Shown one piece after another: positions 847-53,290 of a stretch of 64,000 nt of DNA (its first letter is position 1; each line of letters begins with the position of its first letter). A program made the position numbers and the translations under genes. Location: assembly GCF_040938485.1 (NCBI RefSeq), contig NW_027271017.1, forward strand, positions 186,001 to 250,000, written 5' to 3'. This stretch comes from Diadema antillarum. Lineage: Eukaryota. The notes beneath the pieces were generated by a model. The model saw only the letters and a program-made list of their open reading frames with translations, was not told the origin of the DNA and did not search any database.

Positions 847-2927
847 CTGAGGTAACAAATGAAAGGCCTCTCTTGTTTAAAAGGTTCTGTAGGTAATTGG
901 TCAAGTCGATTCCTGCAAGGTCCATTCGCTGGACGGCGTGGACGATCGCCTCGCCGTCGCGGACAGGGACGACCTGGCACACGCCTTCCCCGATGTCGAG
1001 GACAAGGGAATCTCGTTGACTCGCCAGGACGGCAGCGTTGGCGAAGAAGATCCCAGGCATGTCATGCTTCTCGATCATCACCTGATTGTCGAGAAGACGA
1101 TTGTCCAGTCCAGATATGTGAAAGAAAACAAACGATATAAATCACGTAGGAATGAAAACGTTACTTTACACTTGTCAAAGATTTACACTTCTCAAAGATA
1201 ACTTGACTGCATTAGAAGGAGCCCATGTTCTGTCATTTTACGGATTATTTGAAGGTGATTCAAGCAGCATTAGTTAACGTAACTTAAATGAGCAAAACAC
1301 TTCGACAACATAGGGAAAGAATGAGAGACGGCAACAGCACAGAAATAAACCGTCCGGTAACTTCTTTGTGTGTATGTGTTTGATTGTTAAATTTTTATGT
1401 TTCATTCATACTTGATCAGGTACAAACAAAATGAATAATTTCTGAAATAATTACACTTTACTTAAAAAGCTAACCCACATTGTCGAGGCATGACAAATGA
1501 AAAAAAAAGGTACGTTTAAAGGGTGCAAGTAAGCTGCCTCCGTAGAGCAGGCATTGGGTAGGGTTATTTGGGGGTTATCATTCTGAACGACAGTGGCCAT
1601 TCTGATACGAGCAACCCAGAATTTTGCTAATGGAAGAGTCGCGTCACGTTACATCTTGTTGCTTGGACTCGAGTCAAGTCTACAGGCTATTAAAGGTCGT
1701 ATTATCCAAACGTCACGAAATTTTGCATGATTAAAGAATAATTTTACGGTAATGGTATACATCTCAGAGTTTTCAAAAAAGGAAAAGAAAAACTAACACC
1801 TTGTTACTTGGGAACACGCTCGTCATTTGTACAGGAAATAACGGTGGGAATTTCTTTCGGGTTCCGAATAAATTCATTTGAATCTTTGGTACTTCTCCAC
1901 GATAAAGCAGTTTCCAGTTTTATCATTCTGAGGAAAAGTCTTAGTTACCTACCACAACAATATACCAGCTTTTGAATAGAATCTTGGAGCTTTTAAGGTT
2001 GCAAAAGGGACACACAGGCTTTAAACACAGATGTCTTACCTCAGTCATCTTTTCCCTTTGTGACTTGGGATTGAAGGGAGGTTCCGTGAACAAGGTGGGA
2101 TGCTCTTCGGGACAAGCTCGATGACTGTTGTAGAAAATACGACCCACAAGCTTCTGAATATCATCCCAGTTTGTGACAACCCCGCGCTGGACGGGGTGCT
2201 GAAGGTCGAGCAGCCCGCGTCTCTCTAGCGCTTCCTCGCCGACGTACCGCAGCTCGCTATAGTACACCATACTTGGCTGGATAAGCTTTATCAAAAAATA
2301 AATTAAAAAAAAATGACATGAAAAGTCCGACAGAAATATATAAGACTTGGATTATAATGCGAGAAGACTTCATAATATCTAGAAATCGAAAGGCCAAACA
2401 TCGGAGTCTTAATAGTATAAACTGATGGAAATACGGATGAAATATGAAACAAGGATTCCATTAAGTTAGAAAAAAATCTGATTTGTTTTTCCTCGAAACG
2501 TCACCATCATCATCTACGGTGTGGCATTACATTGAAACCGAGCGATCTTGCAGAGTAAGCTTCAGGTCGGCCTTTCTTTTGTAAAGGTGGATATATTAAC
2601 TTTGAACAAACTTGTCTTCCCCAGCTACTGTTCTTGAAATAATGATGATGATCATAATTGTCTTAGGGGCACAAATCATAGTTGGTATTGGATAGCACAT
2701 TCCACCACCCCAACCCGCATGATTCATGCGTATGAAGGCATTTGTAACCATCTTTGATGATATACCACACAATGCCAAAGGTACTTGCATTGACATCTTA
2801 CCTGGTGCTTTGGCCTTCCAGCAAGGGCGGGGATAGAAGTTCGAGGTTCGTCTTCACCGGCGAAGCCCGCCTTCCACTGCCCCGACCCGCTGTCGATCAT
2901 GAAGCAGCTGTAATCGAGTTCATTCAT
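847..2927 (-). CDS. Divergent actin-like gene, locus 1 (partial: exons 1-3; last exon lies left of the window)
   Basis: Exons 2927-2802 ([42 protein letters not shown]), 2276-2040 (PSMVYYSELRYVGEE...REKMTE) and 1081-847 (VMIEKHD...LSFVTS-G). All have GT-AG boundaries at actin intron positions 41/121/204. A probable leader intron runs from donor 4426 to acceptor 2985. Confidence 0.9.
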
Positions 2928-3955: not shown

Positions 3956-4914
3956 TAGTACACTGTAGTAATATAGCAGTACTTCAGCAGTTAGCAGTAG
4001 TAGTAATAGCTATAGCAGGCCACTAAGTACAGTAGCTAGGTATACGTTGGTAGAGGTATAGCAGTAAAGTTAGCAGTTGTAGTAATGTCTGATGTATTTA
4101 CATTATGAATACAATATTACACTATCATGACTATGTACCTTGTTTTACCAATGTCGTTAGAAATGGTAGATGGGCGTGGCTGAGCTAGCGCGAGAGATTG
4201 ACGCACATGGCATACAGAATATCATAACAAACGTACAACCGAACCAGCTCAGAAAGGCGTGCGATACCAAAATACGTCCGTTGCATGTAGACAGTAGACC
4301 TATCTCTACGGAAGTACAGTGTATACCTCTCTCATCGTTTCCGGGTCTGCAACAGAAGGGCTCTGGCGGTCAAAACATGATACAGATTGTAGTATGAATA
4401 CATCGATAGGAATCACCGTGTCTTACCTGTTTAGTAAAATAAGTCAAGTGATCCCCCCGCAGTGATCGTGCACAGACTCATGCTCGGCCGTTGTATCCAG
4501 CCGCTAGCCGCTATAAGTTATGTCCTCGAGTCGGGTACACTTTCGCTTCATCTGAAGGTAGAGACCCACTGTACGGGTCGATATCGCTGTAAAAAATTAA
4601 TGTCACGGGTGTATCAAGCTTCAGGGGATGTCTCTAGACGACATCTAGGCAAAAATCATCACAACGTTCACACAATGCCCACAACACACTGTCGTGTTTT
4701 ATTAGTGTCGTTCTGCACTCTCTTCACTGTTATAGCGGTACGTTGTTTACGGCAGGAAGCTACTCGATGGACACCCTTGCGTATGTGTGTGTGTGTACAA
4801 GGAGATTTCTCGACAGAAGTTGTATAGCCTGAATACCAGACGTTTTCTTTTGCGAAGATATGGAACGATGCTCACGGTCACCGGACGTCAACATTGCCTC
4901 GGGCGAGAATGAGA

Positions 4915-5165
4915 AGGGCGGCTAGTATCTGATCAGTGGAAATCAGTGGGAATGCTGGGGATGATTGGTCCAATCCTTTTGGGATTCATTTAGGAGTACA
5001 TTATATATCTATTGTTGTGTGAAAATTCTTTGCTTCAGAATGGTTTCATATTCAAGTAATGTGCAGTTCAATCGCCCCGTCACTGTTCAGTACAGGCATG
5101 CTAACCTAGAAAAATTAAACTGCACATTACTTGAATATGAGACCATTCTGAAGCAAATGATTATA
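4915..5165. mobile_element. Truncated copy of the TTAA-type foldback MITE at 17249-17605
   Basis: Direct similarity to 17255-17500 (GGCTAGTA..ATCAGTGGGAATGCTG...GAATATGAGACCATTCTG). The right arm is incomplete. Confidence 0.8.
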
Positions 5166-11506: not shown

Positions 11507-14500
11507 ATGGCACAGGCAGACGAAGAGGTACCGCCCGTGATCATCGACGTCGGGTCTCTCACTTGTCGGGTAGGGCTGAAGGGTGATGAGGATCCGCGAA
11601 CTGTCTTCCCGTCGGTCGTAGGTCATCTCCGAAGAGAGGTAAGGGGAGTCTGAAACTGATGACTTCAACTACATCATGTGCATACTCCATCCCCCGATTC
11701 TTAGGATCAAGTTATTTATGTTCGAGTAGTATAGCCATAGAAAACGCGATAGGGTCATCCCACAAGACCCTCACCCATGAGTCATATACAGCCCACAAGT
11801 CCAACAGCCCACGATTTCGACACTAGCCAAATAAAACCCATGAGACCGACGCTAGTTAAAACAGCCCAGGGGGTGTTTCATAAAGCTGTTCGTAAAGTAA
11901 TACGAACGACTTACGAACGACTGGTGATCGGTTCTTGTTCTGAATTATTGAAATTCTGATAAGTAGGTCTATAGCACTTCAGAACTGATCACCAGTCGCT
12001 CGTAAGTTGTTCGTAACTTTACGAACAGCTTTATGAAACAGGGCCCAGGAGTTCCACAGATACACGGGGTTTAATGTCTCAGTCTCTTGGGCCTTGTTTG
12101 CTTAGTGTCGAACTCATAGGCTATATGAATAGCGAGCTGTATAACTCGTAGGCTATATGACTCGTGGGTGTCGGTCTAGTGACGTGCACCCAATGCGACT
12201 ACCACCACGGCCGTAAGGGAGATTTCACAAAACATTATGCTGATTCGGTAAACCCAGAAATCTGTGGAACACTCAGTGAAGTTTTGAAGATAGTCATGCA
12301 ATCTATTCTAAGGCTATGAATGGATATACCTTTGTTTAATCCTCCTCGATTCCACAAGAATTAGAATATATTAAGCGATTGTTAACATGATATATACACA
12401 TAAAATAAAGAAAAGAAGACCACTCAACATGCTCAAACTAGGTCTTTCAGAACACAATAGTTGAGATTCGGAATTGTTTTCATCGTTAAGAGTATCGTTC
12501 TACCAATTTGACATCACGAAGCTTGTTTGGAAGGTTTCAAACCATGGACAGAGTGCACGTTAAACTTTGAACTTTTTTCTTTCGACCCCGGCCTTTCGGA
12601 GTGTGAGAAATATTCAACATGCACCAGAAAAATTTTTTTAAAAGTCTGCGAAATTGATATCTTAATGATAATATCAATAATAAATTGATACCTTTCGCTA
12701 TAACGAATTACCCTTAAACTGCCACGCAGTATTTTACAAATCTTTCTGCATTCAGTAAATCTACAGATGTGCTTTGGGAAACTTCCTATTTAAGATTCAA
12801 TCAATTCGATTGTAAGTTCTGAATTCATCTAAATCCTGAATGAAATGTACATTGCCCTTGATCATGTTTATAACTGCTCCAATTATCAGGATATGTTACT
12901 CAACTTTGATGTTAAATGATAAATGTGCAAAAAGTTTTGTGTTTATCATTTTTGTTATGTCTTTAATATTGCAAGATTCTCAAAATTCATCGAACTTGCA
13001 TTGTGTCTTCTAGATTGTAACCTAAAGCGTGGTAGGCAAGAGTTCTTATGTTGGAGAAGAGGCTCTGAGCAAGAGAGGTATCTTAAACCTCGTTTGGCCT
13101 GTCGAAGACGGGATCGTCACAAACTGGGACGACATGGAGAAGATCTTTCATCACATTTTCGACAACGAGCTCAACGTCGACGCCAAGAACCATCCCGTCC
13201 TCCTCACCGAGTCCCCGAGTAACCCGAAGGCCAACAGAGAGAAGGCCATACAGGTATCACGGCTAAAATATTTTGTTCTTCTGCGTCTTGCAGTTACAAA
13301 GTCTGGTGTACAAAGACAATAGTTGATTATTATGTAGTAGGAGCCTATTACATTCTAATATTTTAAACCGATTTTAAAATTCGGAATAGGGTCAAACCTG
13401 CCTTACCGGCCACCTATATACACCTGTCGTATACGGCCATTAAAAAAATATAAATGAATAGATAAAAATAGACCCCCCCCCCCCCCAAAGAAAAAAAAAT
13501 CCTCCGAATGAAAAGCCATGTTATAGACCCTGTCTCTATAGCTGATCTCGCGCTCATTTTTTCTCCTTTTTCTCACAAAAGAACAGCCATCGGATGAAAA
13601 GAGTGGGTAGCGGCGAAAATTGAATAAACTCAAACTCAAACTTGGGTCTGGAAAAATTGATTGACATGGGTTAGCTCTCAGAGTGTATCACTCCCGTCTT
13701 GTCCTTCGTTCTTGCCCTCAGTGCTTGTTCGACACGTTCGGCGTCCCTTCCGTCTTCATAGTCAGCCAGCCAGTCGCCTCAATGTTCGCTGCCGGGCGAA
13801 CGACGGGTGTCGTATTGGACGTCGGGGCAAGAGTTGGTCACGTGGTACCGATTTACGAAGGCCACTGCCTACGTCATGCCATCCGTCAAGTAGCATCAGC
13901 TGGCTCCCATCATTCGGAATACTTGCTGGGACTGCTTAAGGATCGTGGATATAACAGCGAGACATTAGGTACTGGTTTACGCCTTTACGTTCTTTATTGC
14001 CTCTGACGAATCAAAGGGCAGATTATTCATAATGGTGCAAGGCTCGACAATATCGGTAGACCATTCGCCCGGGGCACTAAAACTTGGTGTCAGTGTTAGG
14101 ACAATATCAGAAGATGGTTACATTATTGATGCGTTTAAATATGTAGACACTCAAAGGGCGATATTGAAAATACTAGGAATAGACAGAAAATTTCAGAACA
14201 AAACGCTCTCACTTGATAACTCGTATAATTCTATAATGATATATTACTTATTATTATATCATATGATATATTACATTGGATAACGTCAGCAACTTGCTTT
14301 TAAATAGATTTCATTGAAATATCTATTCCTTCCTTCCACTGCATACTTCACCGATCAGTGTGGTAAGATTCTAACTGATAATAAAGTAATCTACCAGTTA
14401 TCACATTCAATGTAAATTATTTTAAAATTATTGAAAATTTATGTATTACCGACATATACCAATTTGGAATACGCAGTTAGAGTCAGTATATTGTGCACTG

Positions 14501-15069
14501 TTTGTATGTACAAAATGTAAATCTTTAATATCTTTACTTTTGGTAATTATTTCCTTTGGTGGTATGAAGACATGAAGACGGTGGACGACATCAAGGAAAA
14601 ACTTTGCGGCGTTGCTCGCGACTTCGATCGCGAGACAGCGAACCCTCGGACGATCACAGAAACTTTTCAGCTGCCTGACGGCCACTCCATCACCATCGAC
14701 AAGGAAAGGCTTCTCGTTCCCGAAGTTTTCTTCAAACCCACGCTCCTGGGCAAAGACTCTCCCGGCATCCACCGGGTCATCTACGACGCCGTGATGGACT
14801 GCGACGCCGAGCTCCGCAAGAAACTTCTGGCCGGTGTCATACTCGCTGGAGGTGCGACCATGTATCGTGGGCTCCAAGAACGGCTGCAAGACGAGCTCGG
14901 CACCGTGGTGCAACCACCGGCTCGAGTGAAAGTCATTCACCCCAAGAAGCATTCTGCTTGGATGGGTGGGTCCGTCTTGGCTGCGTTTGCACCCATCAAA
15001 CAGCAGTGGATTAGCAAGAAAGAGTATGAGTGCCACGGTCCCAGTATCGTTCACAAGAAGTGTTTCTAA
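11507..15069 (+). pseudogene. Divergent actin-like locus 2 with one in-frame stop (possible pseudogene or null allele)
   Basis: Exons 11507-11638, 13014-13253, 13722-13968 and 14570-15069, ending ...IVHKKCF*. The best exon-2 acceptor (TTGTGTCTTCTAG) gives the expected 80 codons but reads ATT GTA ACC TAA (13023-13025). The exon-4 acceptor is a weak AAG. Confidence 0.8.
11770..12170. mobile_element. Nested foldback elements: PIF/Harbinger-like MITE (11870-12045) inside an older imperfect inverted repeat, intron 1 of locus 2
   Basis: Inner TIRs GGGGTGTTTCATAAAGCTGTTCGTAAAG / CTTTACGAACAGCTTTATGAAACAGGGCC with a possible CAG 3-bp TSD. Outer arms CCCATGAGTCATATACAGCCC.../...GGCTATATGACTCGTGGG. 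Confidence 0.6.
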
Positions 15070-17248
15070 ACTTTTTGCTACTCACCATACTGTATCCCCT
15101 CTCATATCAAATGTTGCCAGAGTAACCTGAAGACAATAACCATCTCCTACACTTCAACATACAAGAATGCTTACATTAAAATCGTCTCATGTAATGTTGC
15201 TGTATATCACAAGCCTTCGTGTGTACAAAGCGATAGAAAACAAACAGTGCGGCTCTTGTTAAAATTCGTCTCTCTTAGATATTGATATAATTATAACATA
15301 ATGTTCATTTGTAAGAAATACATAACTGACTATTTTTAAGATGTCTGTCGTCTCTATGTTAGTTACGATTTTGCTCGTAATTCCAATATTCAGTACTTTT
15401 TATGCATATGTATGTACTATATTCCGTTCTTCTACCCTCTTTCTAACCGGCCTCTATATTAGATTTCTAACTGTATGATATGTCAGAAACATGCTTGTTA
15501 CTTGATCCCATTTACATTATTACTTAAGATCAGGATCGTTTTGTAAACTGTAATTCTATACTCATAGAACGTGTAGAAGGAATGACTTCATTTTCTTTCT
15601 TTTCCAATAATGATAAAAATAATGAAATGGATTCTAGATATTCATTTTATTTTGCATTGCACTGATTTTTGTGATTGTGTCGGGTAAAATTGCGATATCG
15701 GAAATTAATTTTAATTTGATTTGAATTGACTTTCGAAGCAAGTAACTTGTTTCTTGATGAGAGTTTGTTGTCTCAATGTATCCTCACCTTCCTCGTACTC
15801 TTACCACATGCTTAATTAATCTCTGCTGCTCAAGTACATGATGCTGTCAAGTTACAACATGCAAAATGTGATATCTCCCGACCTGTTTAGGGTTGTGTTT
15901 GACAGAGCAAGGTTTGTTTGTAGATTATACAAATTAAATAAATCAACGATTTATTTGTTCTTGTATTTAAGACAATAAGATGTTTTCACTCATTTTTACC
16001 TCGCATTGTTCTAAATCTGCCCGTGGAATCGGTATTTCTTTAGCCTCATTTTTTCGAACTATTCAGTAGGAAAGAAGACAATGGCTTTTCGTATTTACAG
16101 CTCAAATTTGACGAAGCTACTTTATTTTCAAGAAGTGTTATTTTCATTTGATTAGAATAACCGATCTTGATAATTGAAACTCATTAGTGGTCGACATTAA
16201 AAAAAAGTAACCGTACTCGGCTTAAAGTGCAATTCCATTGCATGTTCAAGATGACTTCGATTAAAACAAAATGGAATGTAATTAAACAACCTAAATGCAT
16301 GAAATGGAATAATGTGTACAAGAATCGGACATAAAAGACAAAATAGGCTTCAACAGTGGTATCGATTGTACAACCATGGCACACTCTGTATGGACAAGTA
16401 ACAGAATAGTTGATGATGTCACAACCTGTATCCAGGTTTATACACAATGACATTTTCCTATCATCTCCTCTTTTCTGCAACTCTTGAATGTAGTCCTAAT
16501 CCGTTTGTGATTGTAAGCCTCAACTATACGAGAATACAGAGGTGTATGAAATGTAACACACTAAACTGTTGACATGACCATAGAATCTTGTATATGTATG
16601 TCAATGTATCTTGTAGCTTTTATATCTCTTTGGGGAGACTCACTGTTTTTGTAATAATGCTCTTGCCTGAAAGTGATAATCCACCCTTATGATATTCAAC
16701 TTTTCTGTATTATGCAAATTGCCATAACGAAAAAGTTGGGAATTTCTCTTTTTGTGTCTCTTTTTCAGTCAGCGTTCAGCAAATTTGGAATTAGACACCA
16801 GAATGTTGATTTTAGTTTTGCCTGTCATTTAATTTAATTTAATTTCATTCATTTCTTGTTTCTGTATGGTACAAATTAACAATAAAAATAAAGTCATCGT
16901 TTATCACGGCTATAATGTTGCATATGAGAAATAAACATGTCATTCATGAGAGAAAACATATGATAAGAAATACAAAGTAGAAAAATCAAATTACCAGCCA
17001 GGAGGGTCCCCAGTAAGCCTTTATGCGTTCAGATTCAAGGACTGGGACAAGTAGTTCAGGAAGAACAACATTTTCTGGTTGAACTGAGAGGCCATGTTGA
17101 AATAAAAGAAACTAAAATCCAATTCAAACGCCCCTTGGGGCTGTTTGATATAATGGAAGTTGTAATAATTATAGCATTACATGACTGTTAACAGTCGGTG
17201 TTAGTGCTAGTATTTCTCTTTGGGCAAAAGGATTCTTAAGATTCTTAA

Positions 17249-17605
17249 AGGGGATGGCTAGTAACCGATCAGTGGGAATCAGTGGGAATGCTGAGGGATG
17301 ATTGTTCCAATCCTTGTGGGATTCATTTAAGAGTACATTATATATCTACTGTTGTGTGAAAATTATTTGCTTCAGAATGGTCTCATATTCAAGTAATGTG
17401 CAGATTAATGCCCCGTCACTGACCAGGGATGCTTACCTGGAAACATTAAACTGCACATTACTCGAATATGAGACCATTCTGAGGCAAATAATTTTCACAC
17501 AAGAATAGATATATAATGTACTCTTAAATGAACCCCACAAGGATTGGAACAATCATCCTCCAGCATTCCCACTGATTCCCACTGATCAGTTACTAGCCAT
17601 CCCCT
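17249..17605. mobile_element. 357-bp palindromic MITE with TTAA target duplication (Kolobok-like)
   Basis: TTAA|AGGGGATGGCTAGTAAC...GTTACTAGCCATCCCCT|TTAA; the arms pair over most of the length. Confidence 0.85.
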
Positions 17606-18339
17606 TTAAGAATCAAGAACTTATAATCAAAAGTGTATTGATATGGGTATATACATATAATTCAAGTTCATGCTGCATTCAACAACAGTTTATTTCAGAA
17701 CACTGTTGGTGAATACAACATGAACTTGGTTTCAATTTTATTTTTGATGATATCATCATACCAACACGTAGACAGCTTACTCAATAATTATTACATATTA
17801 TATATCATTTTCATGTTATCATGAGAATGTAGACATTTCGAATCCGAGAAAATTGCCAGACGATTAAGTGATTTGACTTGAAACCACATACATGCCTGTA
17901 AAAATATATATAAAGAAAGACATAAACATGGTATTTTCCTGCACATATCTTAACTCCACACCCGATTTTCTCATATCTGAGCTTACCTGGTGGACTACTT
18001 TCTTGCTGGTCTGGGTTACGTTTGTCGAAAATAAAATGGTACAATCAAATCGTGCAAGGGGAATATCTGAACTAATATTTGGGGATTTTACCAAGCTTTC
18101 AGATCACATTGTATGTAGGGCCTCATATGTCTAATTTGCATATTTCGGTATAGTCCACGGAGTTCACAGGACATTAAGGGAAACTCGATCAACCAAGTCG
18201 TGTGTTTTTTTTTTCATGCACAAAATAAACTGCGGGCTACGAATTGTCCGTGTGTCAGTGTGCGTATAATATCCAAGTTTGTGTGCGCATGATATCCAAG
18301 TTTGTGTGTATACAAAAATTAATGATGTCTGTGTGTGCT

Positions 18340-18830
18340 TTGACGGACGTGTAATACAGTGAACTCGTATAGCACGCTTCAGTTACAAATATATTGTACA
18401 CTGTAATATTCCTCTCCGTGAAATATTATGAACATTTTTTATGGTGGGTATTCAGCTTCGCTGCCTTGTGTGTTGTGTTCAATCGACAATCCACTTTGTG
18501 AAATGGGGCATGCCGGTGAGCAGGCGTGAGAGAATTGCTGCAAACTACGAATAGAACAGTGTACATGCCACTATGATAGTGGAGTGAGAACCGACGCGGA
18601 GGAAGTCAGCCGGCCGCCGGAACAGCCTCGGCATGGTGTGATGCGAGGTCCCGTCTCATCCAGCGAGGTTAATTGCAATCACATTACGTAGGTATACAAA
18701 TAATACTTCATCGTGATATGTGATTAACAGTAGCTGAATAGGGATCATTAAAGGGGGGGGGGGGGGGATGACGGGGATATAGATTGTGGGGGAACTTGTA
18801 CGTAGGCTATATGGAACCGCGTGAGGTATA
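18340..18830 (+). promoter_or_regulatory. Conserved upstream module / putative promoter and 5' non-coding exon of locus 3
   Basis: Collinear patchy similarity to 33055-33515 upstream of locus 4 (GGACGTGTAATA, GCTTCGCTG, GGCATGG..ATGCGAGGTCCCG, ACTTCATCGT, AGATTGTGGG, donor-like GTGAG at 18821). Function is inferred. Confidence 0.5.
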
Positions 18831-18926
18831 TCCGTCAGCAAACAAACAATGCAGATATAGATTTGATAGGACTATAAGTGTCTAAGTAGGCCTACATTAT
18901 AAAGGTTGGGTAAGTAGAGTAGCAGA

Positions 18927-19090
18927 NNNNNNNNNNNNNNNNNNNNNNNNNNNNNNNNNNNNNNNNNNNNNNNNNNNNNNNNNNNNNNNNNNNNNNNNNN
19001 NNNNNNNNNNNNNNNNNNNNNNNNNNNNNNNNNNNNNNNNNNNNNNNNNNNNNNNNNNNNNNNNNNNNNNNNNNNNNNNNNNNNNNNNNN
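18927..19090. other. Assembly gap (N run)
   Basis: 164 N. Confidence 1.
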
Positions 19091-19362
19091 GAGTTGAACA
19101 GTCATTAACTGCTACGCTAACCTAATTATTTTGGTAGACACATGTAGATGATAGATACAAATATAGGTGATGTAGCTGATGGTTTATATATTCCTGGGCA
19201 AGCCCGTGGATTCTGCATGCACGAGTATTCAGAGAATGCATGCCCTCATAAATGATATGAAAAAAAAAAAACCGCATAGAATTATAGTCGCAGTATTGAA
19301 AAGTAAGTTAAAAGGCATAACAACAGCGCCGGACATTCATAAAGAATGATAGATATATAGAA

Positions 19363-19405
<43 letters not shown>

Positions 19406-19853
19406 GAGGATAGAGGGAGGGGTATTATCATACAACAGAGAGATATGTTTCAAATCATATTAGTGAGCATTATAATACGTTTTAATGTCAAACTGCGCCT
19501 TTTTACGGTTGATCATAATACCATACAAGATCTGCGTGAAGTGTGTGGATATATAAGCAAACGTGCAAACAGGTAGAAAAGCACCAACCGTTTACTTGAC
19601 AAAGTGCAGTGGGTAAAGGCTATATAAGTCTTACATTCTGTGTGAATAATACTTGTCAGTCTTGGGACCCGTTCGACCTAAATACGAAATGACGACTGAA
19701 TGAGCACCACTTTCTTTTAACAAATTGAAGGTTAATACTCTGAGGAATTGTAGAATTGATCACCTCCGGAATTGAGATCAATTTCATCAAATGTAATAAC
19801 GTAATAGACAATCATTCTTACATGTATGGTGTAGAAATATTGTAGAAATATTT

Positions 19854-22800
19854 TGTTATGTACGCGTTAATACTTATGTATGAAATAGGAGGAAAGTTGG
19901 AGAACTCAATAACAAGCGTGCACGCCAAGAAGTACCTTTCCGAAGCTGACTTTATTTCGCACTGCGCAGGCGCAGCATACACTGAAGACGTGTCAGTGCG
20001 TGACACGTGACCTGTACTGTTCTTCATATATAACATCTCTCCCCCCTTAGCTGAAAACTCATTTATGATAAACTTCCAAATAAACCAAAAAACAAAATAT
20101 TTCTTCTCAAACCACAAAATTATAATTTTTTCATTTGAAGTAATGTCGCCAAATATTTGCATAATTGTAACTCTTTTATTTTCTTCATCTTTGTTTTCAT
20201 ACATTAATATATTTTTTTAATAACCCAAATGACTTAAGATAATCACTAAGCACCAAGTCCGGAAATCAAAGTCCTTAATCCTGGTCAGTTCGAGTCCGTT
20301 CATTAAAATCCGTAGTAATCTGGCTTCCGTCTTTCGCGTTTGGGATACGTCTTGCGCGTCGCTTCGACTACTACTTCGTTGTCGGTTCCTTTACGCGTCT
20401 CGACAGCAACATCGTCGTTGTGATCGTGCTCGCCGTCAACTGGATGATCGTTTACCGCGTTTTCATCATGGTTGTCGACTGCATTTTCACCACGACTGTT
20501 GACTGCATTGTCGCTCTCTGCTTTGTCATCGCGAGACGCGACACTCGCGTCCATCTCGACTGCTCTGTCATTGTCTTCTTTCACGGAGTGCGTCATTCTC
20601 GCTTTCAACTGATCGATATGTCGTTTCCAGCGAAACTTCTGACCCCTGAAGACGACCTCCACCGTGTATAGCATAGGCCCTGCACGCTCGATGACGACTC
20701 CAGGCACGTATTTGTCTCCCTGCCCGTAGTTTCGCGCGTACACCGGCGCATGAACTTCGAATTCGCGAAGTGGTGGAGAACGGCGACCTTGCATTTGCGA
20801 ATTTCGCTTTCCCTCGACAACTGAATCGACATCAGGCACCGCTGCCGAGAGTCGTGTTCGCAGTTGTCGCTTCATGAGCAGCTCCGCTGGCGTCTGCATC
20901 GTCGTTGAGTGCGGAGTTGTTCTGTAGCTGAGAAGGAACCGTGACAATTTCACGTGAAGAGGTCCGCTCATTTTTTTCAATGCCGCCTTCACAGTTTGGA
21001 CCGCGCGCTCCGCTAGCCCGTTTGTAGCGGGATGATATGGCGCTCCTCGGATGTGCTTTACGGCATTCTTGCTCATGAATGTCGCAAACTCCTCGCTCGC
21101 AAAACACGGTCCGTTGTCGCTGACGAGCGTGTGTGGCAGACCGTGAGCGGCGAAGATTTCTCTCAGCTTGTCTATAGTCGCTTCACTGGTAGACTTCTTT
21201 GTGATCGCGACTTCCATCCACTTTGTATGGGAATCAATGACGACAAGGAGCATTTTGCCGTCGATGGGACCGGCGTAGTCGACGTGAACGCGTGACCAAG
21301 GTTGTGACGGTCGTTCCCAGGGACACCGTGGCGCTTTTGCTGGATCGCGTTGGTGTATCTGGCACTGAGCACACGATTTCACTCGCTCCTCCAACTCCTT
21401 GTCGATTTGTGGCCACCATACGTAACTGCGAGCTCTTCCTTTCATAGCCACAATTCCTGGGTGCGCAGCATGGATTTCATCTAGCATTTGTGCACGACCC
21501 TGCTGTGGTATCACAACACGAGTTCCACACAATATCACACCATCTTGTACGCTCAATTCATCGCGTCTGTTGACGTATGGCTTCAGCTCATCATCTTTCG
21601 TCAGCATCCGCGTATCTGGCCATCCATGTGTCACAAAATGCCGAACTCGCGACAACGCTCGATCTTTCGATGTGAGGGCGCGTATTCGCGCTGGTGTGAG
21701 TGGCGTCTTCTCCATCGCGTCCATGAGGAGGGCAATGTCACCAGGTACGGGTACGGCTGCGATCGTAGGTGCCAGCGGAAGGCGGCTCAATGCGTCAGCA
21801 TTCGCATTCGCTGCCCCCGCTTTGTGCGTTAGCTGGTAATCGTACGCTGAAAGAGTGATTGCCCAACGCACAACTCGCGGTGATGCCATGTGGGGTATCG
21901 CTTTGTTTTCTCCAAACAAACCTAAGAGAGGCTTGTGGTCAGTGACAATTTCGAATTTCCTTCCGTAGAGATATTGGTGGAATCTTTTGACGCCAAACAC
22001 GATCGCCAGTCCTTCCTTGTCTAGCTGCGAATAACCGCGTTCCGCTTTGCTCAGGGTACGTGATGTGAATCCAATGGGCCTTTCCGATCCGTCAGACATT
22101 TTGTGCGCTAGTACAGCTCCAACGCCGTATGGACTTGCATCACAGCACAAAATCAACTCTAAGCTCGGATCGAAATGAGTGAGAACACTTGCCGATTTGA
22201 GCAATTCTTTTGCCCGTGTGAACGCGTTCACATGTTCGCGTTCCCATTTCCATTTTTCGTCCTTACGAAGGAGACGGTGCAGAGGCTCTAGCGTGGTCGG
22301 AAGGTGAGGCAGGAATTTGCCGTAGTAATTCAGCATTCCCAGAAACGCTCTCAGCTCTTTGATGTTGCTGGGTGGGGGTGCATCGGTGATGGCTTTGACC
22401 TTGTCGGCGGTCGGGCTGAGTCCTTTGGACGTGATCGTGTGTCCCAAATATTGGACTTCATCTGCGAGGAAGACACATTTCTCGTGCTTGAGTCGGAGTC
22501 CTGCTTCCTCGAGAGTGTGAAGAACGCGTTCGAGGTTGGCGAGGTGATCACTGATTGATTCACCTGTGATCAGCAAGTCATCCAGATAAACAGCTACCCC
22601 TGGAATGTCCGCTAGCAAAGTTTCCATTGCTCTCTGGAAGACTGACGGTGCCGTAGAAATACCGAATGGCATTCTGTTGTAATGAAACAATCCCCGATGC
22701 GTGTTTATCGTCACAAATTCGCGAGAGTCTGGATCCAAGACTAGCTGCTGGTACGCATGCGACAGGTCTAATTTCGTGAAGTGCTGTCCCTTGACTAACT

Positions 22801-34511: not shown

Positions 34512-34620
34512 ACGGAAGCTCGGTGATCTCGTGGAGATGACGCCTGTCCGGAAATCAGGAGGTCGTAGGTTCGAATCCTGCTCGAGTACGCACACCCATG
34601 ATTATCATGGCTACTACTAG
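34512..34620 (+). mobile_element. tRNA-derived SINE head
   Basis: A-box-like AGCTCGGTGATCTCGTGG, B-box GGTTCGAATCC (34568-34578) and a CCG anticodon-like arm; the acceptor stem does not close. Confidence 0.6.
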
Positions 34621-34823
34621 AACACTGATCAATTCAGTGCTTATTTACGTCGCTGTAGGGCAATTTGTCAGTCAGTTGCATGCAAAACTTATTTCCAACT
34701 GAATTGTGCCGATAGATGACATATCGTATATATCGTTGATCACTGTCTCTGCTGTTTTCTTTTTCCCTTTTCCTTCGTATCGACCCCTCCCGCCTTTTAA
34801 TTCGCCTAGAGAATGTCGCAGTA

Positions 34824-37800
34824 ATGACGACCGAACCAGAAGGGGGTGGCACAGCGGTAGTCATCGACTGCGGCTCTCGTACGTGCCGGGCGGGCTTCGC
34901 GGGGGAAGACGAACCACGGGTGACCTTCCCAGCCGTTGTAGGACGTCCGAAGAAACAGGTGCACCGCTATTGTCATTGTCATACTGTTCACTCGTTGGTG
35001 TTTTTTTTTTCTTGGAAGTATTGTAATCTATATATTTTCCCCTTCATCATATTATCCTCTTTCATGTTTCAATTCTAATGCATTTCTTCCTCATTTGCTT
35101 CTTCTTTTGGTTTTGTTATTTCTCAAAGTTCTTTGTAGAACAATTAGTTCATGCTTTTGTCATGTGCCACCATGATTTTTGTAATGGATTGCTTTATGGA
35201 TTGCCGGTCAAACAGATACAGAGATTACAATCAATACAAGACTCTGCTGCACGAGTAGTATCCAAAATCAGGAAACATGAACAAATTTCACCAGTTTTAA
35301 AAAGCTTACACTGGCTTCCAGTGAAAAATCGGATTTAGTTTAAGATACTGTTATTAGCATTTGAGTGTTTTCATATGTTTGCTCCACATTATCTAAGGGA
35401 GCTACTTCATATCTACACACCAGAGAGGAAATTTCGATCAAAAAGTAAAGATGTATTTATTATTCCATCCAGAAGAACCAAATTTTACGGAGAACGAACA
35501 TATGTTTTTAATGCCCCTACTTTATGGAATAATTTACCTCAGAAATTAAGACAAATTACTGATAGATTCAAGTCTGCCTTGAAAACGCATTTGTTTACAG
35601 TGTAAGCAAACATGAAGCTCGGTACCATCACTGTAAGTGCAATTGTATGTTTTTGTATAGTCTTTTCATTTTTTATTTCTTGAGCGCATATAAAGGGACA
35701 TTATCACTTTGTGTTATGCGCTATATAAGCACTGTCAATTATTATTATTATTATTATTAATTTCTGCCACCCCCTTCTTATTTTTTTTTTTTTTTTGCTT
35801 GTAGAATCCCTCCTTCTTTTGCTTCTCAATTTCCCGTTCTTATTAATCTCCTTGCGTTCTACCTTTCATCTCTTTTTGCTGTACTAGCTCCTTGCAGCTT
35901 TGAGGCTGCTTTTTAAACAAGAGCCTATACGGTATTAACGAACATTTTGTGATTAATATTGACACAAAAGCCGCGAAGTGGCCGATTCAAATTCGTTATC
36001 GTACACACCGTGAAATTTATGTAGGACACGTCAACCGACTCAGTGGGTGAGAAGGATTTTCATATCGGACGTGAAGCGGAGGAGAAGAGGGAGATGCTTC
36101 AGAAGAAATGGCCAGTAGAATTTGGGTTCATCTATAACTGGGACGACATGGAGAAGATCTGGCATCACACTTTCTACGACGAGCTCCAGGTCGTCCCCGA
36201 AGAACGCCCGGTCCTTTTCACTGAACATCCGATGAATCTCACAGTCTACAGGCAGAAGTTGGCGCAAGTGAATTCATTTTGCTTGATCCCATCCCACCCC
36301 CACCCCTATATCTGTTCCTTTGTCCTTCCTTACGTTGCCATTTCAGTGTACACGAGTGCGCGGACAATGGTCGATTAAGACAAGTAATAGATGTTGTGAT
36401 GAAATGAATGAAGTGTTAAATAGGTTACTTCTTTCAGAGAAATAAACGGAGAGAGGGAGAGATGAAAAAGTTGGAGATGTATAGATATGAAAATGCTTAC
36501 ATTTCTAGAATGGAGGGACTTTAATCTAAAAAAAAAGACGTAAATTGACTTCACACGCAAAGAAGAATTTGATTTATTTTTACGAGAGTATAATCAGTAT
36601 TACGCTCTATGTTCATGTCGTGCTTCAGCGGAATTGCTATGTACACATAGATTGGGGCAAACGGTGAGTAAAAAAAACCTAAGTACTCTAAGATTCGACT
36701 TATATTCCTTTAGGAAATGTTTGAAAAGTTTGAGGTGCCAGCCCTATACCTCCTCCCCCACGCCGTGGCATCCCTCATCGCTGCCGACATCACCACGGGA
36801 CTCGTGCTCGACGTCGGGCACGGCAGCATCCACACGATTCCCGTGTACGAGGGCCACGTGCTGAAGCATCAGGTGCGTCACATGGACTTTGCCGGTTCCA
36901 CACACTCTGAGTTGATGTTCGACCTGCTCAGAAAAAGGGGCTACCCGTTCGAGACCACCGGTGAGTAAAGACAAAAATAACATGTGATTTGTCATAGTAT
37001 TCCATGTGACTTCAATAAATGAAATAGAATCAGATAAGCAGAATAGCTAAAATTCATACAGAGAGGACATCAAGGACATAGAGTAAAAAGGTGAATGAAT
37101 TTTGTAAAATTGTGGTATTTTTGTTTGTTTGTTTGTTGTTGTTGTTTTTTGTTTGACTGACTTACTGATTAGAGTTAATGGTCGCAAAAAAGGTGACTGG
37201 TGTAGATTAAAGAGGTGATATAATATACGCCTCAAAACCTCCTGCTGGTTTGGACATGTAAGGCATCTGTGATTACCCTGATTTGGTAGATAATTTAACA
37301 ACTTACTATAACAACTGTTTTCCCTGCAAAAAGGCTACAATAATATTATAACGTTAAGGAAAATTTGAATTCTTGTTTTTATTTCCATTGCCATAGCGGA
37401 TTGGAGAGTTGCCACTGACATCAAAGAGAGGATGTGCTACGTCGCTCTCGACTTTGAAAGAGAAATGGAGATCGCAAACTCTATTATATCGTCGACGATC
37501 ACAGAGCACTATACTCTTCCAGACGGAAAAGTCGTGACCGTCGCAAAAGAACGATTCGTCGTTCCCGAACTCTTTTTCGATCCCAGTCTAATGGAACTCG
37601 AGGTGTCAGGCATCCACGAGATGATTCAGTATACGGTAATGAGATGCGACGTCGACATCCGGAACGATCTCCTGGCCAACATCGTACTCTCCGGTGGACC
37701 CACCATGTATCCCGGGCTTAGCGAACGACTGCAGAAGGAGCTTGCCATTTTGTTTCCGTCGTCAACGGAAGTTAAAGTAACGGCACCACGGAACCACGCT

Positions 37801-37917
37801 TCGTGGGTCGGAGGGTCAATGTTCGCTACCCAAAGCCCACTCAATGGGGGTCTATGGGTCTCTAAAGAAGAGTATGACGAATACGGACCTTGGATTGTTT
37901 CCAGACGCTGCTTCTAG
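34824..37917 (+). CDS. Divergent actin-like gene, locus 4 (381 aa), tandem paralogue of locus 3
   Basis: Exons 34824-34958, 36025-36267, 36714-36960 and 37397-37917. GT-AG, open frame ending ...WIVSRRCF*. Confidence 0.93.
35120..35760 (+). mobile_element. 5'-truncated L2/CR1-group LINE 3' fragment in intron 1 of locus 4
   Basis: Translates [17 protein letters not shown]...[21 protein letters not shown]...APHYL...[15 protein letters not shown]...[10 protein letters not shown], the typical L2 ORF2 C-terminus, with a stop codon and an (ATT)n tail. Confidence 0.88.
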
Positions 37918-37976
37918 CTCTTAAAATATTATCAAAACCATCATATTGCTCCACAAATTTAAGATTAAAGATAAGT

Positions 37977-38012
<36 letters not shown>

Positions 38013-41043: not shown

Positions 41044-43804
<2,761 letters not shown>

Positions 43805-47201: not shown

Positions 47202-49879
47202 GGGGAATCCCCAATCGTCATCCGAAGTGACTCACTAATCTTGGCCGTATGGGGGCTGGTCACTGCAGGAGACGTTTTGGGGTCAAGCATGATTGTCAAG
47301 AAAAAACAAAAAACAAAACATGACGCGTTCTGTGACTAACATGCTCACTTTAGTTGCTACCTTATCTATCATTACTGCCTCAGTAGTTGGAGTACTCCTC
47401 GTATACTTCTACTATTATCACAGCTGCCACTGTCTTTACTACTTCTATGATTGTAATATTTTACTACCACAGTACATGTACTACTTCTACTACTATTATC
47501 ACTATATCACAACTAAGACGAATTACTGCTCCTACCGTTTCCTTTGGTGCTTCTACTACAGTATCTAACACTTTCCACGTAATGTTCCATCTGTATTAAA
47601 GGACAAGTTCACCTTCATAAACATAAGGATTGAGAAAATGCAACAATATTAGTAGAACACATCAGTGAAAGTTTGAGGTAAATTGCACAATCGATGCAAA
47701 AGTTATGAATTTTTTAAATTTTTGTGTTGGAACCGCTGGATGAGGAGACTACTACAGCTTGTGAGTCATATGCGTACAACAGTACAAAGAAAATGTAAAA
47801 GAAAATTCAACATATTTTCACTTTTTTGGCATGATAAAAGTGCACTTGACTTGCCTCTTTCTAAAGGCAGGGGGAATAATATTACCCATAACATTTGTCG
47901 GTAACGAGTCAGGGGAATGTGTACTTTTTTCAAAAGATGGAATTTTGTGAAATTCTCCTTATATTTTCCTTATATTGTTGTACGCATGTGACATCTAAGT
48001 TATTCATACACTGCAGTAGTCTTCTCATCCAGCGGGTACTGCACAAAAACTTCAAAAATTCATAACTTTTGAACGGATTGTCTGATTTTCCTCAAACTTT
48101 CAATGATGTGTTCTACTAATATTGCTACATTCTCTCAATCCTTATGTTTATGAAGGTGAGCTTGTCCTTTAAAAGGACTACATGTTGTATAACCATTACA
48201 TTACATGTATTTTTATCAGAGATATATAAAAAACAAGCCTGTTTACTGTTATCTTAAATGAACTTTTCCCCTATATTCATGCTCGTAATGGAACTACGAA
48301 CTGGCTCATTTCAATTGCAGAAGGCAGTAGTGACGAATTGTTATTTACAAAATGAAGTAACTTAAGTGATCCGCACCTGTTACTCATGGGGGATTCCCCT
48401 TTTCATGGGGCGTGGCAGGTAAACAGATGACCACTCCAAACGCTTCATGAGGGGTAAACCAAACAACTAATCATCACTCACTGTGGACTTATGCCCAGTA
48501 ATCCTCTGAGTCACTCATATCGCCCCAGAACCATTATACATGGCTCTAAACCCATATAGGGGTATTCCCCTACGTGAAGAATAAGGTCATTCTGGAAGTA
48601 GTCTGATATCCAGACCTTGAAGGACTTTAAAGTGGATAGAGGAACAGTACACGGAGAACTGCGGAAATGCATCAATCATTGACACATTTTGAGTGATGAT
48701 ATTTAAAATGTACTAAACTTATTAATGAGGGAAGTTAAAGATCATGATAGAGAAAACGAAGGTAACTAGACGTATGCATTTATGCATGTACATTTAGGGC
48801 CTACTTCAGGAAAAATAAATCTTGTATTTTATCTATTATTTCGTTTGTTTGTTTGCTTGCTTGTTTTGCTTTGTTTTAGTTTGTGAGGGCCGTTTAAATG
48901 TTAAACGGCTGAATATTGTATTGTGAGCAGTGTAGCGGTGTAGGCCTATGTGTACATGATTATCCTCTAGTTACAAGTGCATTACGATTATAAGCTCGTC
49001 ACTGTATAGAAGTATAGAACACCAACAGCCACATAACTCATTATAGTTTCATAACACTTTTCGTATTCCTTGCACTCCGCGAACATGAACCAAAAAATGT
49101 GATTTGTTGAATTTGAATGGACATAATGCACTCAATTTATATGTAATACTAATACACTTACATACATTATACACACTGACTGGACTTCGGCGTTTCACAC
49201 TCAAAGAGGGTCTGCGTGGAAAGACTAGGTCTGTGTTTGCCGCATCCATTATTTGAACAGAAGCCCTCCTCGATTTATATGCAAATGAGATGATCCGAGG
49301 GACTCCGTATTGACACGTTCCAAATATGGACATGCTATTGTCGACTTCATATCGTGCCCTCTTGTTCGGCAGTGGCGTAATGGTCAGCCCCTAACTTGGA
49401 TGTCAGATCGTACGAGTATTTGACTCACTGCTGTCTTGCAAAATAGCCATGAATCTTACCGGAATTACTCGTAGCTCAGATCCAAATTATGCAAAGCTAA
49501 TATTTAATGTGATCAAGTTGATACCAACGGCGGTTCAGGTAACTAGGAACAAAACTGATTACACTTATATCATTCTGTGTTGATCGTGATGACAATGAAA
49601 AAAAAACAGAGGAAATTTCTTTTTGAATCGGTTGTTATTTCTTTATGTGCTCAATAGCGATACAATAGAAGAAACAGGAGAACGAATTTTTGATTAAATT
49701 TCATGCTTCAATCTCAGATTTTCCAATAGTTGTTTGTGTCTAATGCACATGTACACTCAGTCACGACACAAATTACATTTATGATTCTAAATACTTGTAA
49801 TGCGTGTAATGATGACTTATTTAGAATTGGTCAAGCTCCTACATTGTGTAAACGCTATCACATCCAAACCCCTGACTCA
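47202..49879. promoter_or_regulatory. Candidate enhancer cluster (NF-kB-type and AP-1-type sites) between divergent loci 5 and 6
   Basis: GGGGAATCCCC at 47202-47212, GGGGATTCCCC at 48389-48399, GGGGTATTCCCC at 48559-48570. TGA(C/G)TCA at 47228, 47762, 48507, 49421 and 49873. These are motif matches only. Confidence 0.4.
47600..48168. mobile_element. Foldback MITE with TTAA TSD (Kolobok-like)
   Basis: TTAA|AGGACAAGTTCACCTTCATAAACATAAGGATTGAG...CTCAATCCTTATGTTTATGAAGGTGAGCTTGTCCT|TTAA. Confidence 0.88.

Positions 49880-50770: not shown

Positions 50771-53290
<2,520 letters not shown>

What the first reader, a model, noticed from the sequence alone, without database searches (positions are those of the whole stretch)
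11507..37917. Loci 2-4 form a clade of predicted hydrolysis-deficient, toxin-site-free actins
Seen: a shared 2-aa deletion in the PPERKYS loop (PKKHS, PRNHA, PRNHA), K18R, loss of H73 (D/Y/F), loss of R177 (Q/H/H) and D157 replaced (A/Q/H). Loci 3 and 4 also have Q137H. D11, H161, the GG..MY.G motif and the terminal CF are kept, and frames 3/4 are intact. Established: H73 (SETD3-methylated) and R177 form the phosphate-release back door; R177 is the target of C2/iota/SpvB-type ADP-ribosyltransferase toxins; Q137 is catalytic. Inference: a pseudo-ATPase actin subfamily kept by selection, possibly structural, a decoy, or toxin-resistant. This is the best candidate here for an undescribed system.
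Basis: partly seen in the sequence, partly recalled or inferred. Interest (0 to 1): 0.75.

Follow-up and report, generated by a model that had tools for sequence, protein, structure and literature searches.

The report
Diverged actin-like gene trio in Diadema
Three neighbouring sea-urchin genes are strongly diverged copies of actin with a rewritten ATP site; selection has kept them in the genus Diadema, yet half the copies in this animal are broken, so they look like dispensable, lineage-specific actin-like genes and not a new system.

Summary
The window is Diadema antillarum (C129 of the uncollapsed 1.75-Gb diploid assembly). Loci 2-4 are four-exon genes with GT-AG introns at the same three positions as their neighbours, and they form a clade (100/99 support) with three intact D. 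setosum orthologues.

They are already RefSeq models named 'actin-like', 'actin-1-like' and 'actin-5-like'. No protein outside Diadema is closer to them than ordinary actin (55% identity or less).

Selection was real: dN/dS is 0.30 for L3 against L4 (dS 0.32) and 0.08 between the two L2 haplotypes (dS 0.073).

The genes are nevertheless dispensable in this animal:
- L2 has an in-frame TAA in this window, and a roughly 570-bp MITE in exon 3 on the other haplotype.
- L4 has a nonsense codon on the other haplotype.
- The window L3 allele has a young gypsy element 85 bp upstream of its ATG and a 4.15-kb transposon in intron 2.

The assembly gap is intergenic.

Best reading: lineage-restricted 'orphan' actin-like proteins with a remodelled nucleotide pocket, D-loop and filament contacts, comparable to the non-canonical Arps of flies and mammals. 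Loss of hydrolysis, a decoy role and toxin resistance are untested. No RNA data could be reached. Another note of this scan (s1-229747), on another piece of this genome, reads a similar actin-like cluster the same way.

The parts
11507..15069 (+). L2, an actin-like gene. Exons 11507-11638, 13014-13253, 13722-13968, 14570-15069. This allele carries an in-frame TAA at 13023-13025 (codon 48). RefSeq gives only a 288-aa truncated product, XP_071487914.1.
13023..13025 (+). Derived nonsense codon in L2 exon 2. It is TAA here and GAA (Glu) on haplotype C608 and in the D. setosum orthologue.
18927..19090 (.). Assembly gap. It is intergenic, between L2 and the gypsy element, and lies in no actin exon.
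19850..24628 (-). Young Ty3/gypsy LTR retrotransposon. It has two identical 187-bp LTRs and one 1359-aa ORF. It ends 85 bp upstream of the L3 ATG and is absent from the other haplotype.
24713..32535 (+). L3, an actin-like gene. Exons 24713-24844, 25335-25577, 30402-30648, 32015-32535. The ORF is intact at 380 aa. RefSeq annotates only the last two exons here (XP_071487915.1, 254 aa).
25893..30040 (.). A 4.15-kb insertion with 33-bp terminal inverted repeats in intron 2 of L3 (coordinates approximate). It is absent from the other haplotype, where this intron is about 670 bp.
34824..37917 (+). L4, an actin-like gene. Exons 34824-34958, 36025-36267, 36714-36960, 37397-37917. The ORF is intact at 381 aa and equals XP_071487917.1. 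The allele on C608 has a TAA at codon 117.

Best explanation
L2, L3 and L4 are tandem, lineage-restricted actin-like paralogues of the sea-urchin genus Diadema.

Shown:
- They descend from an actin gene with introns at codons 41, 121 and 204.
- Their common ancestor acquired a remodelled nucleotide pocket (P1 loop D-x-G/S-S-L/R-T-C-R; D157, H73 and R177 lost; a 2-residue deletion next to K336) and a polar D-loop.
- These states were then kept under purifying selection in both D. antillarum and D. setosum.
- The modelled L4 protein still folds as G-actin.
- The genes are not essential. In the sequenced animal 3 of 6 alleles carry coding lesions and a fourth has transposons in its promoter region and an intron. 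Each haplotype keeps one clean L3/L4-type gene.

Inferred:
- The proteins probably still bind adenine nucleotide.
- They do not perform actin's polymerisation-coupled hydrolysis and gated phosphate release, and they do not enter filaments as normal subunits.
- They act as accessory, probably tissue-restricted actin-like proteins, with L3 and L4 partly redundant.
For: Identity and annotation. The genome is D. antillarum; C129 and C608 are the two haplotypes of an uncollapsed 1.75-Gb assembly (PMC13511894). RefSeq models exist for all six alleles, and three intact D. setosum orthologues exist (XP_072170600.1, XP_072170601.1 and XP_072170603.1).

Clade. Support is 100/99, and the 2-residue deletion is shared.

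Selection.
- L3/L4: dN 0.094, dS 0.319, omega 0.30 (bootstrap 0.21-0.42).
- L2 haplotypes: 18 synonymous against 6 non-synonymous differences, omega 0.08.
- An ORF evolving neutrally at 0.15 substitutions per site stays free of stop codons in 0.6% of simulations.

Family and fold. Pfam Actin scores 351-370 bits, against 483 for an ordinary sea-urchin actin. The AF2 model of L4 has pLDDT 79 and matches G-actin at TM 0.88-0.93.

Restriction. An exhaustive HMMER scan and two word-indexed searches found no non-Diadema protein closer than conventional actins, at 55% identity or less.

Remodelling.
- The pocket is 47-53% identical to actin but 60-63% identical between the L2 and L3/L4 branches, against 47-50% over the whole protein.
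- The D-loop is 8-15% identical between the two branches.
- The lateral contacts are 33-41% identical between the two branches.

Lesions.
Against: - No expression data could be reached. No RNA run was listed, so transcription, tissue and the true intron-1 junction are unknown.
- RefSeq itself uses a different junction for L3 on C608 and for one D. setosum gene.
Branch-specific dN/dS is therefore missing, and recent relaxation in D. antillarum cannot be excluded.
- Three broken alleles of six is a lot for selected genes.
- Nucleotide binding, hydrolysis and polymerisation are inferred from residues only.
- The AF2 model has low confidence at residues 341-359, next to the deletion. This may reflect the shallow 20-sequence alignment.
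Confidence: 0.6

Rival explanations
1. All three loci are unprocessed pseudogenes drifting neutrally. The open frames are leftovers.
For: L2 is broken on both haplotypes: a TAA in the window and a MITE in exon 3 on C608. L4 has a nonsense allele on C608. The window L3 allele has a gypsy element 85 bp upstream of its ATG and a 4.15-kb transposon in intron 2. No RNA evidence was obtained.
Against: dN/dS is 0.30 (CI 0.21-0.42) for L3/L4 at dS 0.32, and 0.08 between L2 haplotypes at dS 0.073. Both exclude 1. All three are intact in D. setosum. Every splice site is a canonical GT-AG. The neutral simulation leaves an ORF free of stop codons in only 0.6% of trials. The lesions differ between haplotypes, so they are recent and segregating, not ancestral.
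Confidence: 0.12
2. One reading: a selected pseudo-ATPase actin subfamily whose point is insensitivity to R177-directed ADP-ribosylating toxins, or a decoy role.
For: R177 is replaced in all members and in D. setosum. The back-door residues H73 and R177 are changed together (role of these residues: PMC10643162, found).
Against: R177 is one of dozens of changes. The neighbouring R183, D184 and L185, the P1 loop, the D-loop and the plug are also rewritten, as expected from general release from filament function. No toxin-related or immune context was seen nearby. The genes are dispensable in this animal. A minor non-polymerising paralogue would not protect the bulk actin pool.
Confidence: 0.05
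3. They are working filament-forming actin isoforms with normal ATPase, merely fast-evolving.
For: The fold is predicted as G-actin. D11, D154, H161, K213/E214, GG.TMY and the C-terminal CF are kept.
Against: They are only about 50% identical to actin. G15, D157, H73 and R177 are lost in all three, and Q137 in L3/L4. The hydrophobic D-loop residues that dock into the next subunit are replaced by polar ones. The plug and lateral contacts are 33-59% identical to actin.
Confidence: 0.08
4. L3 and L4 are functional, while L2 is being lost in D. antillarum. This is a mixed fate within the clade and refines the best explanation.
For: Both L2 alleles carry independent disabling lesions. L3 and L4 each have at least one clean allele. 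The L2 orthologue is intact in D. setosum.
Against: The L2 haplotypes show the strongest purifying signal of all (omega 0.08). An in-frame alternative acceptor 27 nt downstream (exon starting at 13041) could skip the TAA. RefSeq models L2 on C608 with the MITE left out of the product (XP_071501820.1).
Confidence: 0.4

Closest known systems
Non-canonical, lineage-restricted actin-related proteins of Drosophila (Arp53D and the obscura-group Arp paralogues; PMC8291977, PMC7038667)
   Same: They arise by duplication of an actin or Arp gene, are confined to one lineage, evolve much faster than the parent, keep the actin fold, and are individually non-essential for viability.
   Different: Some of the fly genes arose by retroduplication (Arp2D). 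These are tandem copies that keep their introns. The fly genes are shown to be testis-enriched and under positive selection. Expression and positive selection could not be tested here.
Mammalian germline actin-like proteins (ACTL7A/B, ACTL8, ACTL9, ACTRT1-3). From my own knowledge, plus bioRxiv 10.64898/2026.08.21.746286 for ACTL8.
   Same: They are actin-derived proteins roughly 40-60% identical to actin, with altered polymerisation surfaces and an accessory role.
   Different: No orthology. The Diadema proteins are closest to conventional actins, not to any of these. The tissue is unknown.
Conventional sea-urchin actins (the canonical gene on contig C298, and neighbours L5-L7 in the window)
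   Same: The same Pfam family, the same fold and the same C-terminus. L2-L4 share three intron positions with L5-L7.
   Different: About 50% identity. The P1 and P2 phosphate loops, H73, R177, the D-loop and the plug are changed, Q137 too in L3/L4, and there is a 2-residue deletion at P333-E334.
Nucleotide-binding but hydrolysis-poor nuclear Arps such as Arp4/BAF53 (from my own knowledge)
   Same: An actin fold with a non-canonical phosphate loop, in which the nucleotide may be structural and not turned over.
   Different: Arp4 is ancient and universal, and it has characteristic insertions. No orthology or shared insertions were seen here.

Membership tests
Actin family (Pfam PF00022) | Full-length match above the gathering score | tested here: met
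   351-370 bits against a cut-off of 27 for the L4, L2 and D. setosum proteins. Exon-wise matches were found in the genome scan.
Actin family (Pfam PF00022) | Actin fold with four subdomains | tested here: met
   AF2 model of L4: pLDDT 79, pTM 0.76. Foldseek top hits are all G-actin or F-actin at TM 0.82-0.93.
Conventional actin isoform | Near-identity to other actins (typically above 85%) | tested here: not met
   49-53% identity to the canonical D. antillarum actin and to PDB actins.
Conventional actin isoform | Canonical catalytic and phosphate-gate residues: DNGSG..K18, H73, Q137, D154-x-G-D157, H161 and R177 | tested here: not met
   G15, K18, H73, D157 and R177 are replaced in all three. 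Q137 is replaced in L3 and L4. D11, D154 and H161 are kept.
Conventional actin isoform | Hydrophobic D-loop and plug used in filament contacts | tested here: not met
   The D-loop is 23-31% identical to actin and polar. The lateral contact set is 33-59% identical. The contact lists come from my own knowledge.
Conserved Arp classes (Arp1-Arp10) | Orthology to a class found across eukaryotes | tested here: not met
   The best non-Diadema hits are conventional actins, not Arps. Nothing outside Diadema exceeds 55% identity. The tree puts the clade apart from the conventional actins, alongside the array's other diverged loci.
Lineage-restricted non-canonical actin-like proteins ('orphan Arps') | Derived by duplication and confined to one lineage | tested here: met
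   A tandem array with shared introns. Orthologues were found only in D. setosum.
Lineage-restricted non-canonical actin-like proteins ('orphan Arps') | Accelerated evolution but still constrained | tested here: met
   omega is 0.30 for L3/L4 and 0.08 between the L2 haplotypes. The clade has long branches in the tree.
Lineage-restricted non-canonical actin-like proteins ('orphan Arps') | Germline or otherwise tissue-restricted expression | not testable with these tools
   The look-up of sequencing runs listed no RNA run, so read laying could not be used.
Lineage-restricted non-canonical actin-like proteins ('orphan Arps') | Positive selection at some sites | not tested
Unprocessed pseudogene | Disrupted frame | tested here: inconclusive
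   Met for both L2 alleles and for the C608 allele of L4. Not met for either L3 allele or for the window allele of L4.
Unprocessed pseudogene | Neutral substitution pattern (dN/dS about 1) | tested here: not met
   The bootstrap intervals, 0.21-0.42 and 0.01-0.19, exclude 1.

The most novel reading that the evidence does not exclude
The clade encodes actin-fold proteins locked in one nucleotide state: they bind ATP or ADP but neither hydrolyse it nor gate phosphate release. Selection would keep them as regulators of filament ends or of actin-binding partners. L3 and L4 would be kept as a redundant pair in which complementary null alleles segregate, which would make the trio a natural experiment in turning the actin ATPase into a pseudo-enzyme.
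Probability: 0.12. Interest if true: 0.6.

Novelty: new member of a known kind. Interest (0 to 1): 0.35.

Why it matters
If expressed, these genes would extend the phenomenon of 'orphan' actin-like proteins to echinoderms. So far it has been studied in flies and mammals. They would also give three natural variants in which the phosphate loops, the H73/R177 back door and the D-loop are rewritten together on an intact actin fold. That is useful for asking which parts of the ATPase cycle the fold itself needs.

The segregating null alleles make D. antillarum a ready source of natural knock-outs.

Otherwise this is ordinary gene-family turnover in a highly heterozygous genome. The genes are already annotated by RefSeq.

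Tried and rejected
- RNA evidence. The look-up of sequencing runs (kind rna) on 34700-38000 listed no run.
Only protein-level comparison with D. setosum was possible.
- Joined (spliced) models of L2 and L3 were not sent to any search tool. Searches used one exon by reference (window:32011-32532) and RefSeq protein ids returned by the tools. The joined step was done only inside local scripts for alignment, dN/dS and trees.
- Orthologues outside Diadema. None turned up in the exhaustive scan or in two word-indexed searches capped at 8000 candidates. Orthologues diverged to about 50% identity would be hidden among conventional actins.
- Monophyly of all diverged loci of the array (L1, U1-U3 and L2-L4). 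They grouped at 93/97, but together with unrelated long-branch proteins from a dragonfly and a fungus. I treat this as possible long-branch attraction.
- Orthology of L4 to one particular D. setosum gene is unresolved (support 50/10).
- A motif regex for the deleted loop across fetched proteins was too narrow and gave nothing useful.
Full report
**What the window is.**
A six-frame Pfam scan of the window's own assembly places the window at C129:186001-250000 of a 1.75-Gb, 2963-contig genome. Nearly every actin hit in that genome occurs twice, on different contigs. Protein searches name the organism. RefSeq proteins of Diadema antillarum lie on contigs of exactly the lengths of C129 (7,133,265 bp) and C608 (1,134,287 bp). 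The genome paper states that the 1.75-Gb assembly (annotation release GCF_040938485.1-RS_2025_02) kept both haplotypes: 84.4% of BUSCOs are duplicated and heterozygosity is 2.52% (PMC13511894). C608:938-958 kb is therefore the second haplotype of the stretch under study.

**Anatomy.**
The window holds seven actin-family loci. Three are near-conventional: L5 at 41047-43804 on the minus strand, L6 at 50795-53290, and L7 at about 59.1-62.4 kb. L1 is diverged and lies on the minus strand, running off the window start.

The three loci of the finding all share the intron plan of L5-L7, with GT-AG at every junction.
- L2: 11507-11638, 13014-13253, 13722-13968, 14570-15069
- L3: 24713-24844, 25335-25577, 30402-30648, 32015-32535
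- L4: 34824-34958, 36025-36267, 36714-36960, 37397-37917

My L4 model equals RefSeq XP_071487917.1 residue for residue.

The assembly gap (18927-19090) is intergenic, and no exon-like match lies near it. The same gene order stands uninterrupted on C608, so the finding does not depend on continuity across the gap.

I aligned the proteins to C. elegans actin 1d4x, whose residue numbers equal the usual actin numbering, and to the canonical D. antillarum actin.

| Actin residue | L2 | L3 | L4 |
|---|---|---|---|
| K18 | R | R | R |
| H73 | D | Y | F |
| Q137 | Q | H | H |
| D157 | A | Q | H |
| R177 | Q | H | H |

- P333-E334 are deleted in all three.
- D11, D154, H161, K213/E214, GG.TMY.G and the C-terminal CF remain.
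- The hydrophobic D-loop is replaced by polar sequence, one residue longer in L3/L4, and the plug is altered.

**They are a clade, and Diadema keeps them.**
A maximum-likelihood tree joins L2 with L3, L4 and two D. setosum proteins at 100/99. A focused tree gives the same support. The 2-residue deletion is an independent shared character.

D. setosum has intact full-length orthologues with nearly consecutive accessions: XP_072170600.1 (L2 type, 95% identical), XP_072170601.1 and XP_072170603.1 (L3/L4 type, 80-90% identical). The derived pocket states are the same in both species.

Outside Diadema nothing is closer than conventional actin, at 55% identity or less. This holds in an exhaustive HMMER scan of 1.84 billion representatives with the last exon of L3 and in two searches with full-length orthologues.

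**Selection.**
- L3 against L4: dN 0.094, dS 0.319, omega 0.30, bootstrap interval 0.21-0.42. Every exon is below 0.42.
- The two L2 haplotypes differ by 18 synonymous and 6 non-synonymous codons, giving omega 0.08 at dS 0.073.
- The L3 and L4 alleles differ by 4 synonymous: 2 non-synonymous and 3: 2 codons respectively.
- A neutral simulation leaves an ORF of this length free of stop codons in only 0.6% of trials at 0.15 substitutions per site.

Long-term neutral decay is therefore rejected.

**The genes are nevertheless dispensable here.**
- The window L2 allele has TAA at 13023-13025, where the other haplotype and D. setosum have GAA. RefSeq accordingly gives it only a 288-aa product.
- The C608 L2 allele carries a palindromic MITE of about 570 bp inside exon 3, plus a 6-bp in-frame deletion. 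RefSeq XP_071501820.1 leaves the MITE out of the product.
- The C608 L4 allele has ACA changed to TAA at codon 117, and RefSeq gives it 254 aa.
- The window L3 allele is coding-intact. It has a gypsy element with two identical 187-bp LTRs (19850-24628) ending 85 bp before its ATG, and a 4.15-kb element with terminal inverted repeats in intron 2. Both are absent from C608. RefSeq annotates only its last two exons.

Each haplotype thus retains one clean L3/L4-type gene: L4 on C129 and L3 on C608. Neither haplotype retains a clean L2.

**Likely mechanism.**
Shown:
- Pfam Actin scores are 351-370 bits, against 483 for an ordinary urchin actin.
- The AF2 model of L4 (pLDDT 79) superposes on G-actin at TM 0.88-0.93. 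Confidence is low at the D-loop and at residues 341-359, next to the deletion.
- The nucleotide-pocket positions are no better conserved against actin (47-53%) than the protein as a whole.
- Those pocket positions are better conserved between the L2 and L3/L4 branches (60-63%) than the whole protein is (47-50%).
- The D-loop (8-15%) and the lateral contacts (33-41%) are not conserved between the two branches.

Inferred: the pocket was remodelled once and then kept. The adenine and ribose contacts (K213, E214, G302, M305, Y306) survive. The phosphate loops, the D157 contact and the H73/R177 gate described for phosphate release (PMC10643162) do not. The most likely state is a protein that binds nucleotide but lacks actin's polymerisation-coupled hydrolysis and gated Pi release, and that cannot make normal longitudinal contacts. 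It would be an accessory actin-like protein, not a filament subunit. I found no evidence for a decoy or toxin-resistance role.

**Comparison with what is known.**
The closest described category is the lineage-restricted, fast-evolving non-canonical Arps or actin-like proteins of Drosophila and mammals (PMC7038667, PMC8291977). The origin by duplication, the lineage restriction and the accelerated but constrained evolution are met here. Germline expression and positive selection could not be tested. The genes are not members of any conserved Arp class and are not conventional actin isoforms.

Another note of this scan (s1-229747), on another piece of this genome, reads a similar actin-like cluster the same way. 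I reached my reading independently and tested it here.

**Limits.**
- No RNA run was listed.
- Joined exon models were used only in local scripts and not in search tools.
- The contact-residue lists come from my own knowledge.

Noticed in passing
window 19850-24628 (-): An apparently very young Ty3/gypsy LTR retrotransposon. Its two 187-bp LTRs are 100% identical, and it has a single 1359-aa gag-pol ORF (20303-24382). It is inserted 85 bp upstream of the L3 start codon and is absent from the other haplotype. Observed only.
   Followed up: partly
window about 25893-30040: A 4.15-kb insertion with 33-bp terminal inverted repeats and no long ORF, in intron 2 of L3. It is absent from haplotype C608 and is probably a non-autonomous DNA transposon.
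   Followed up: partly
window 47596-48172; L010 (C608) about 4451-5031: A palindromic MITE family of about 575 bp. The copy in the window is 97.9% identical to the one that interrupts exon 3 of L2 on the other haplotype. Older copies (75-85%) lie near several other actin-like loci of the array.
   Followed up: partly
C129:153-190 kb (loci L011-L014) and window 847-2927 (-): Four more strongly diverged actin-like loci (U3, U2, U1, L1) lie upstream on the minus strand. They have their own pocket changes: H161 to D or Q, and H73 to R in L1. L1 ends in KKCQLF. Their grouping with L2-L4 may be long-branch attraction.
   Followed up: partly
whole array against C298:2189-2193 kb: Every array member with exon 1 in hand has an intron after codon 41, which the canonical actin gene on C298 lacks. 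The locus at C129:295.7-298.6 kb lacks the codon-121 intron. This suggests the array descends from one ancestor with introns at codons 41, 121 and 204.
   Followed up: partly
window 11.4-15.5 kb against C608: The two haplotypes are far more diverged around L2 (5-12% in non-coding DNA, dS 0.073) than around L3 and L4 (about 1.1-1.3%). The cause is unknown.
   Followed up: no
window 24844-25357 (L3 intron 1): RefSeq uses a different donor/acceptor pair for L3 on C608 and for one D. setosum gene, giving QVHPFSSS in place of Q|DASTDST in the D-loop. Two in-frame splice choices exist, and only RNA reads can decide between them.
   Followed up: partly
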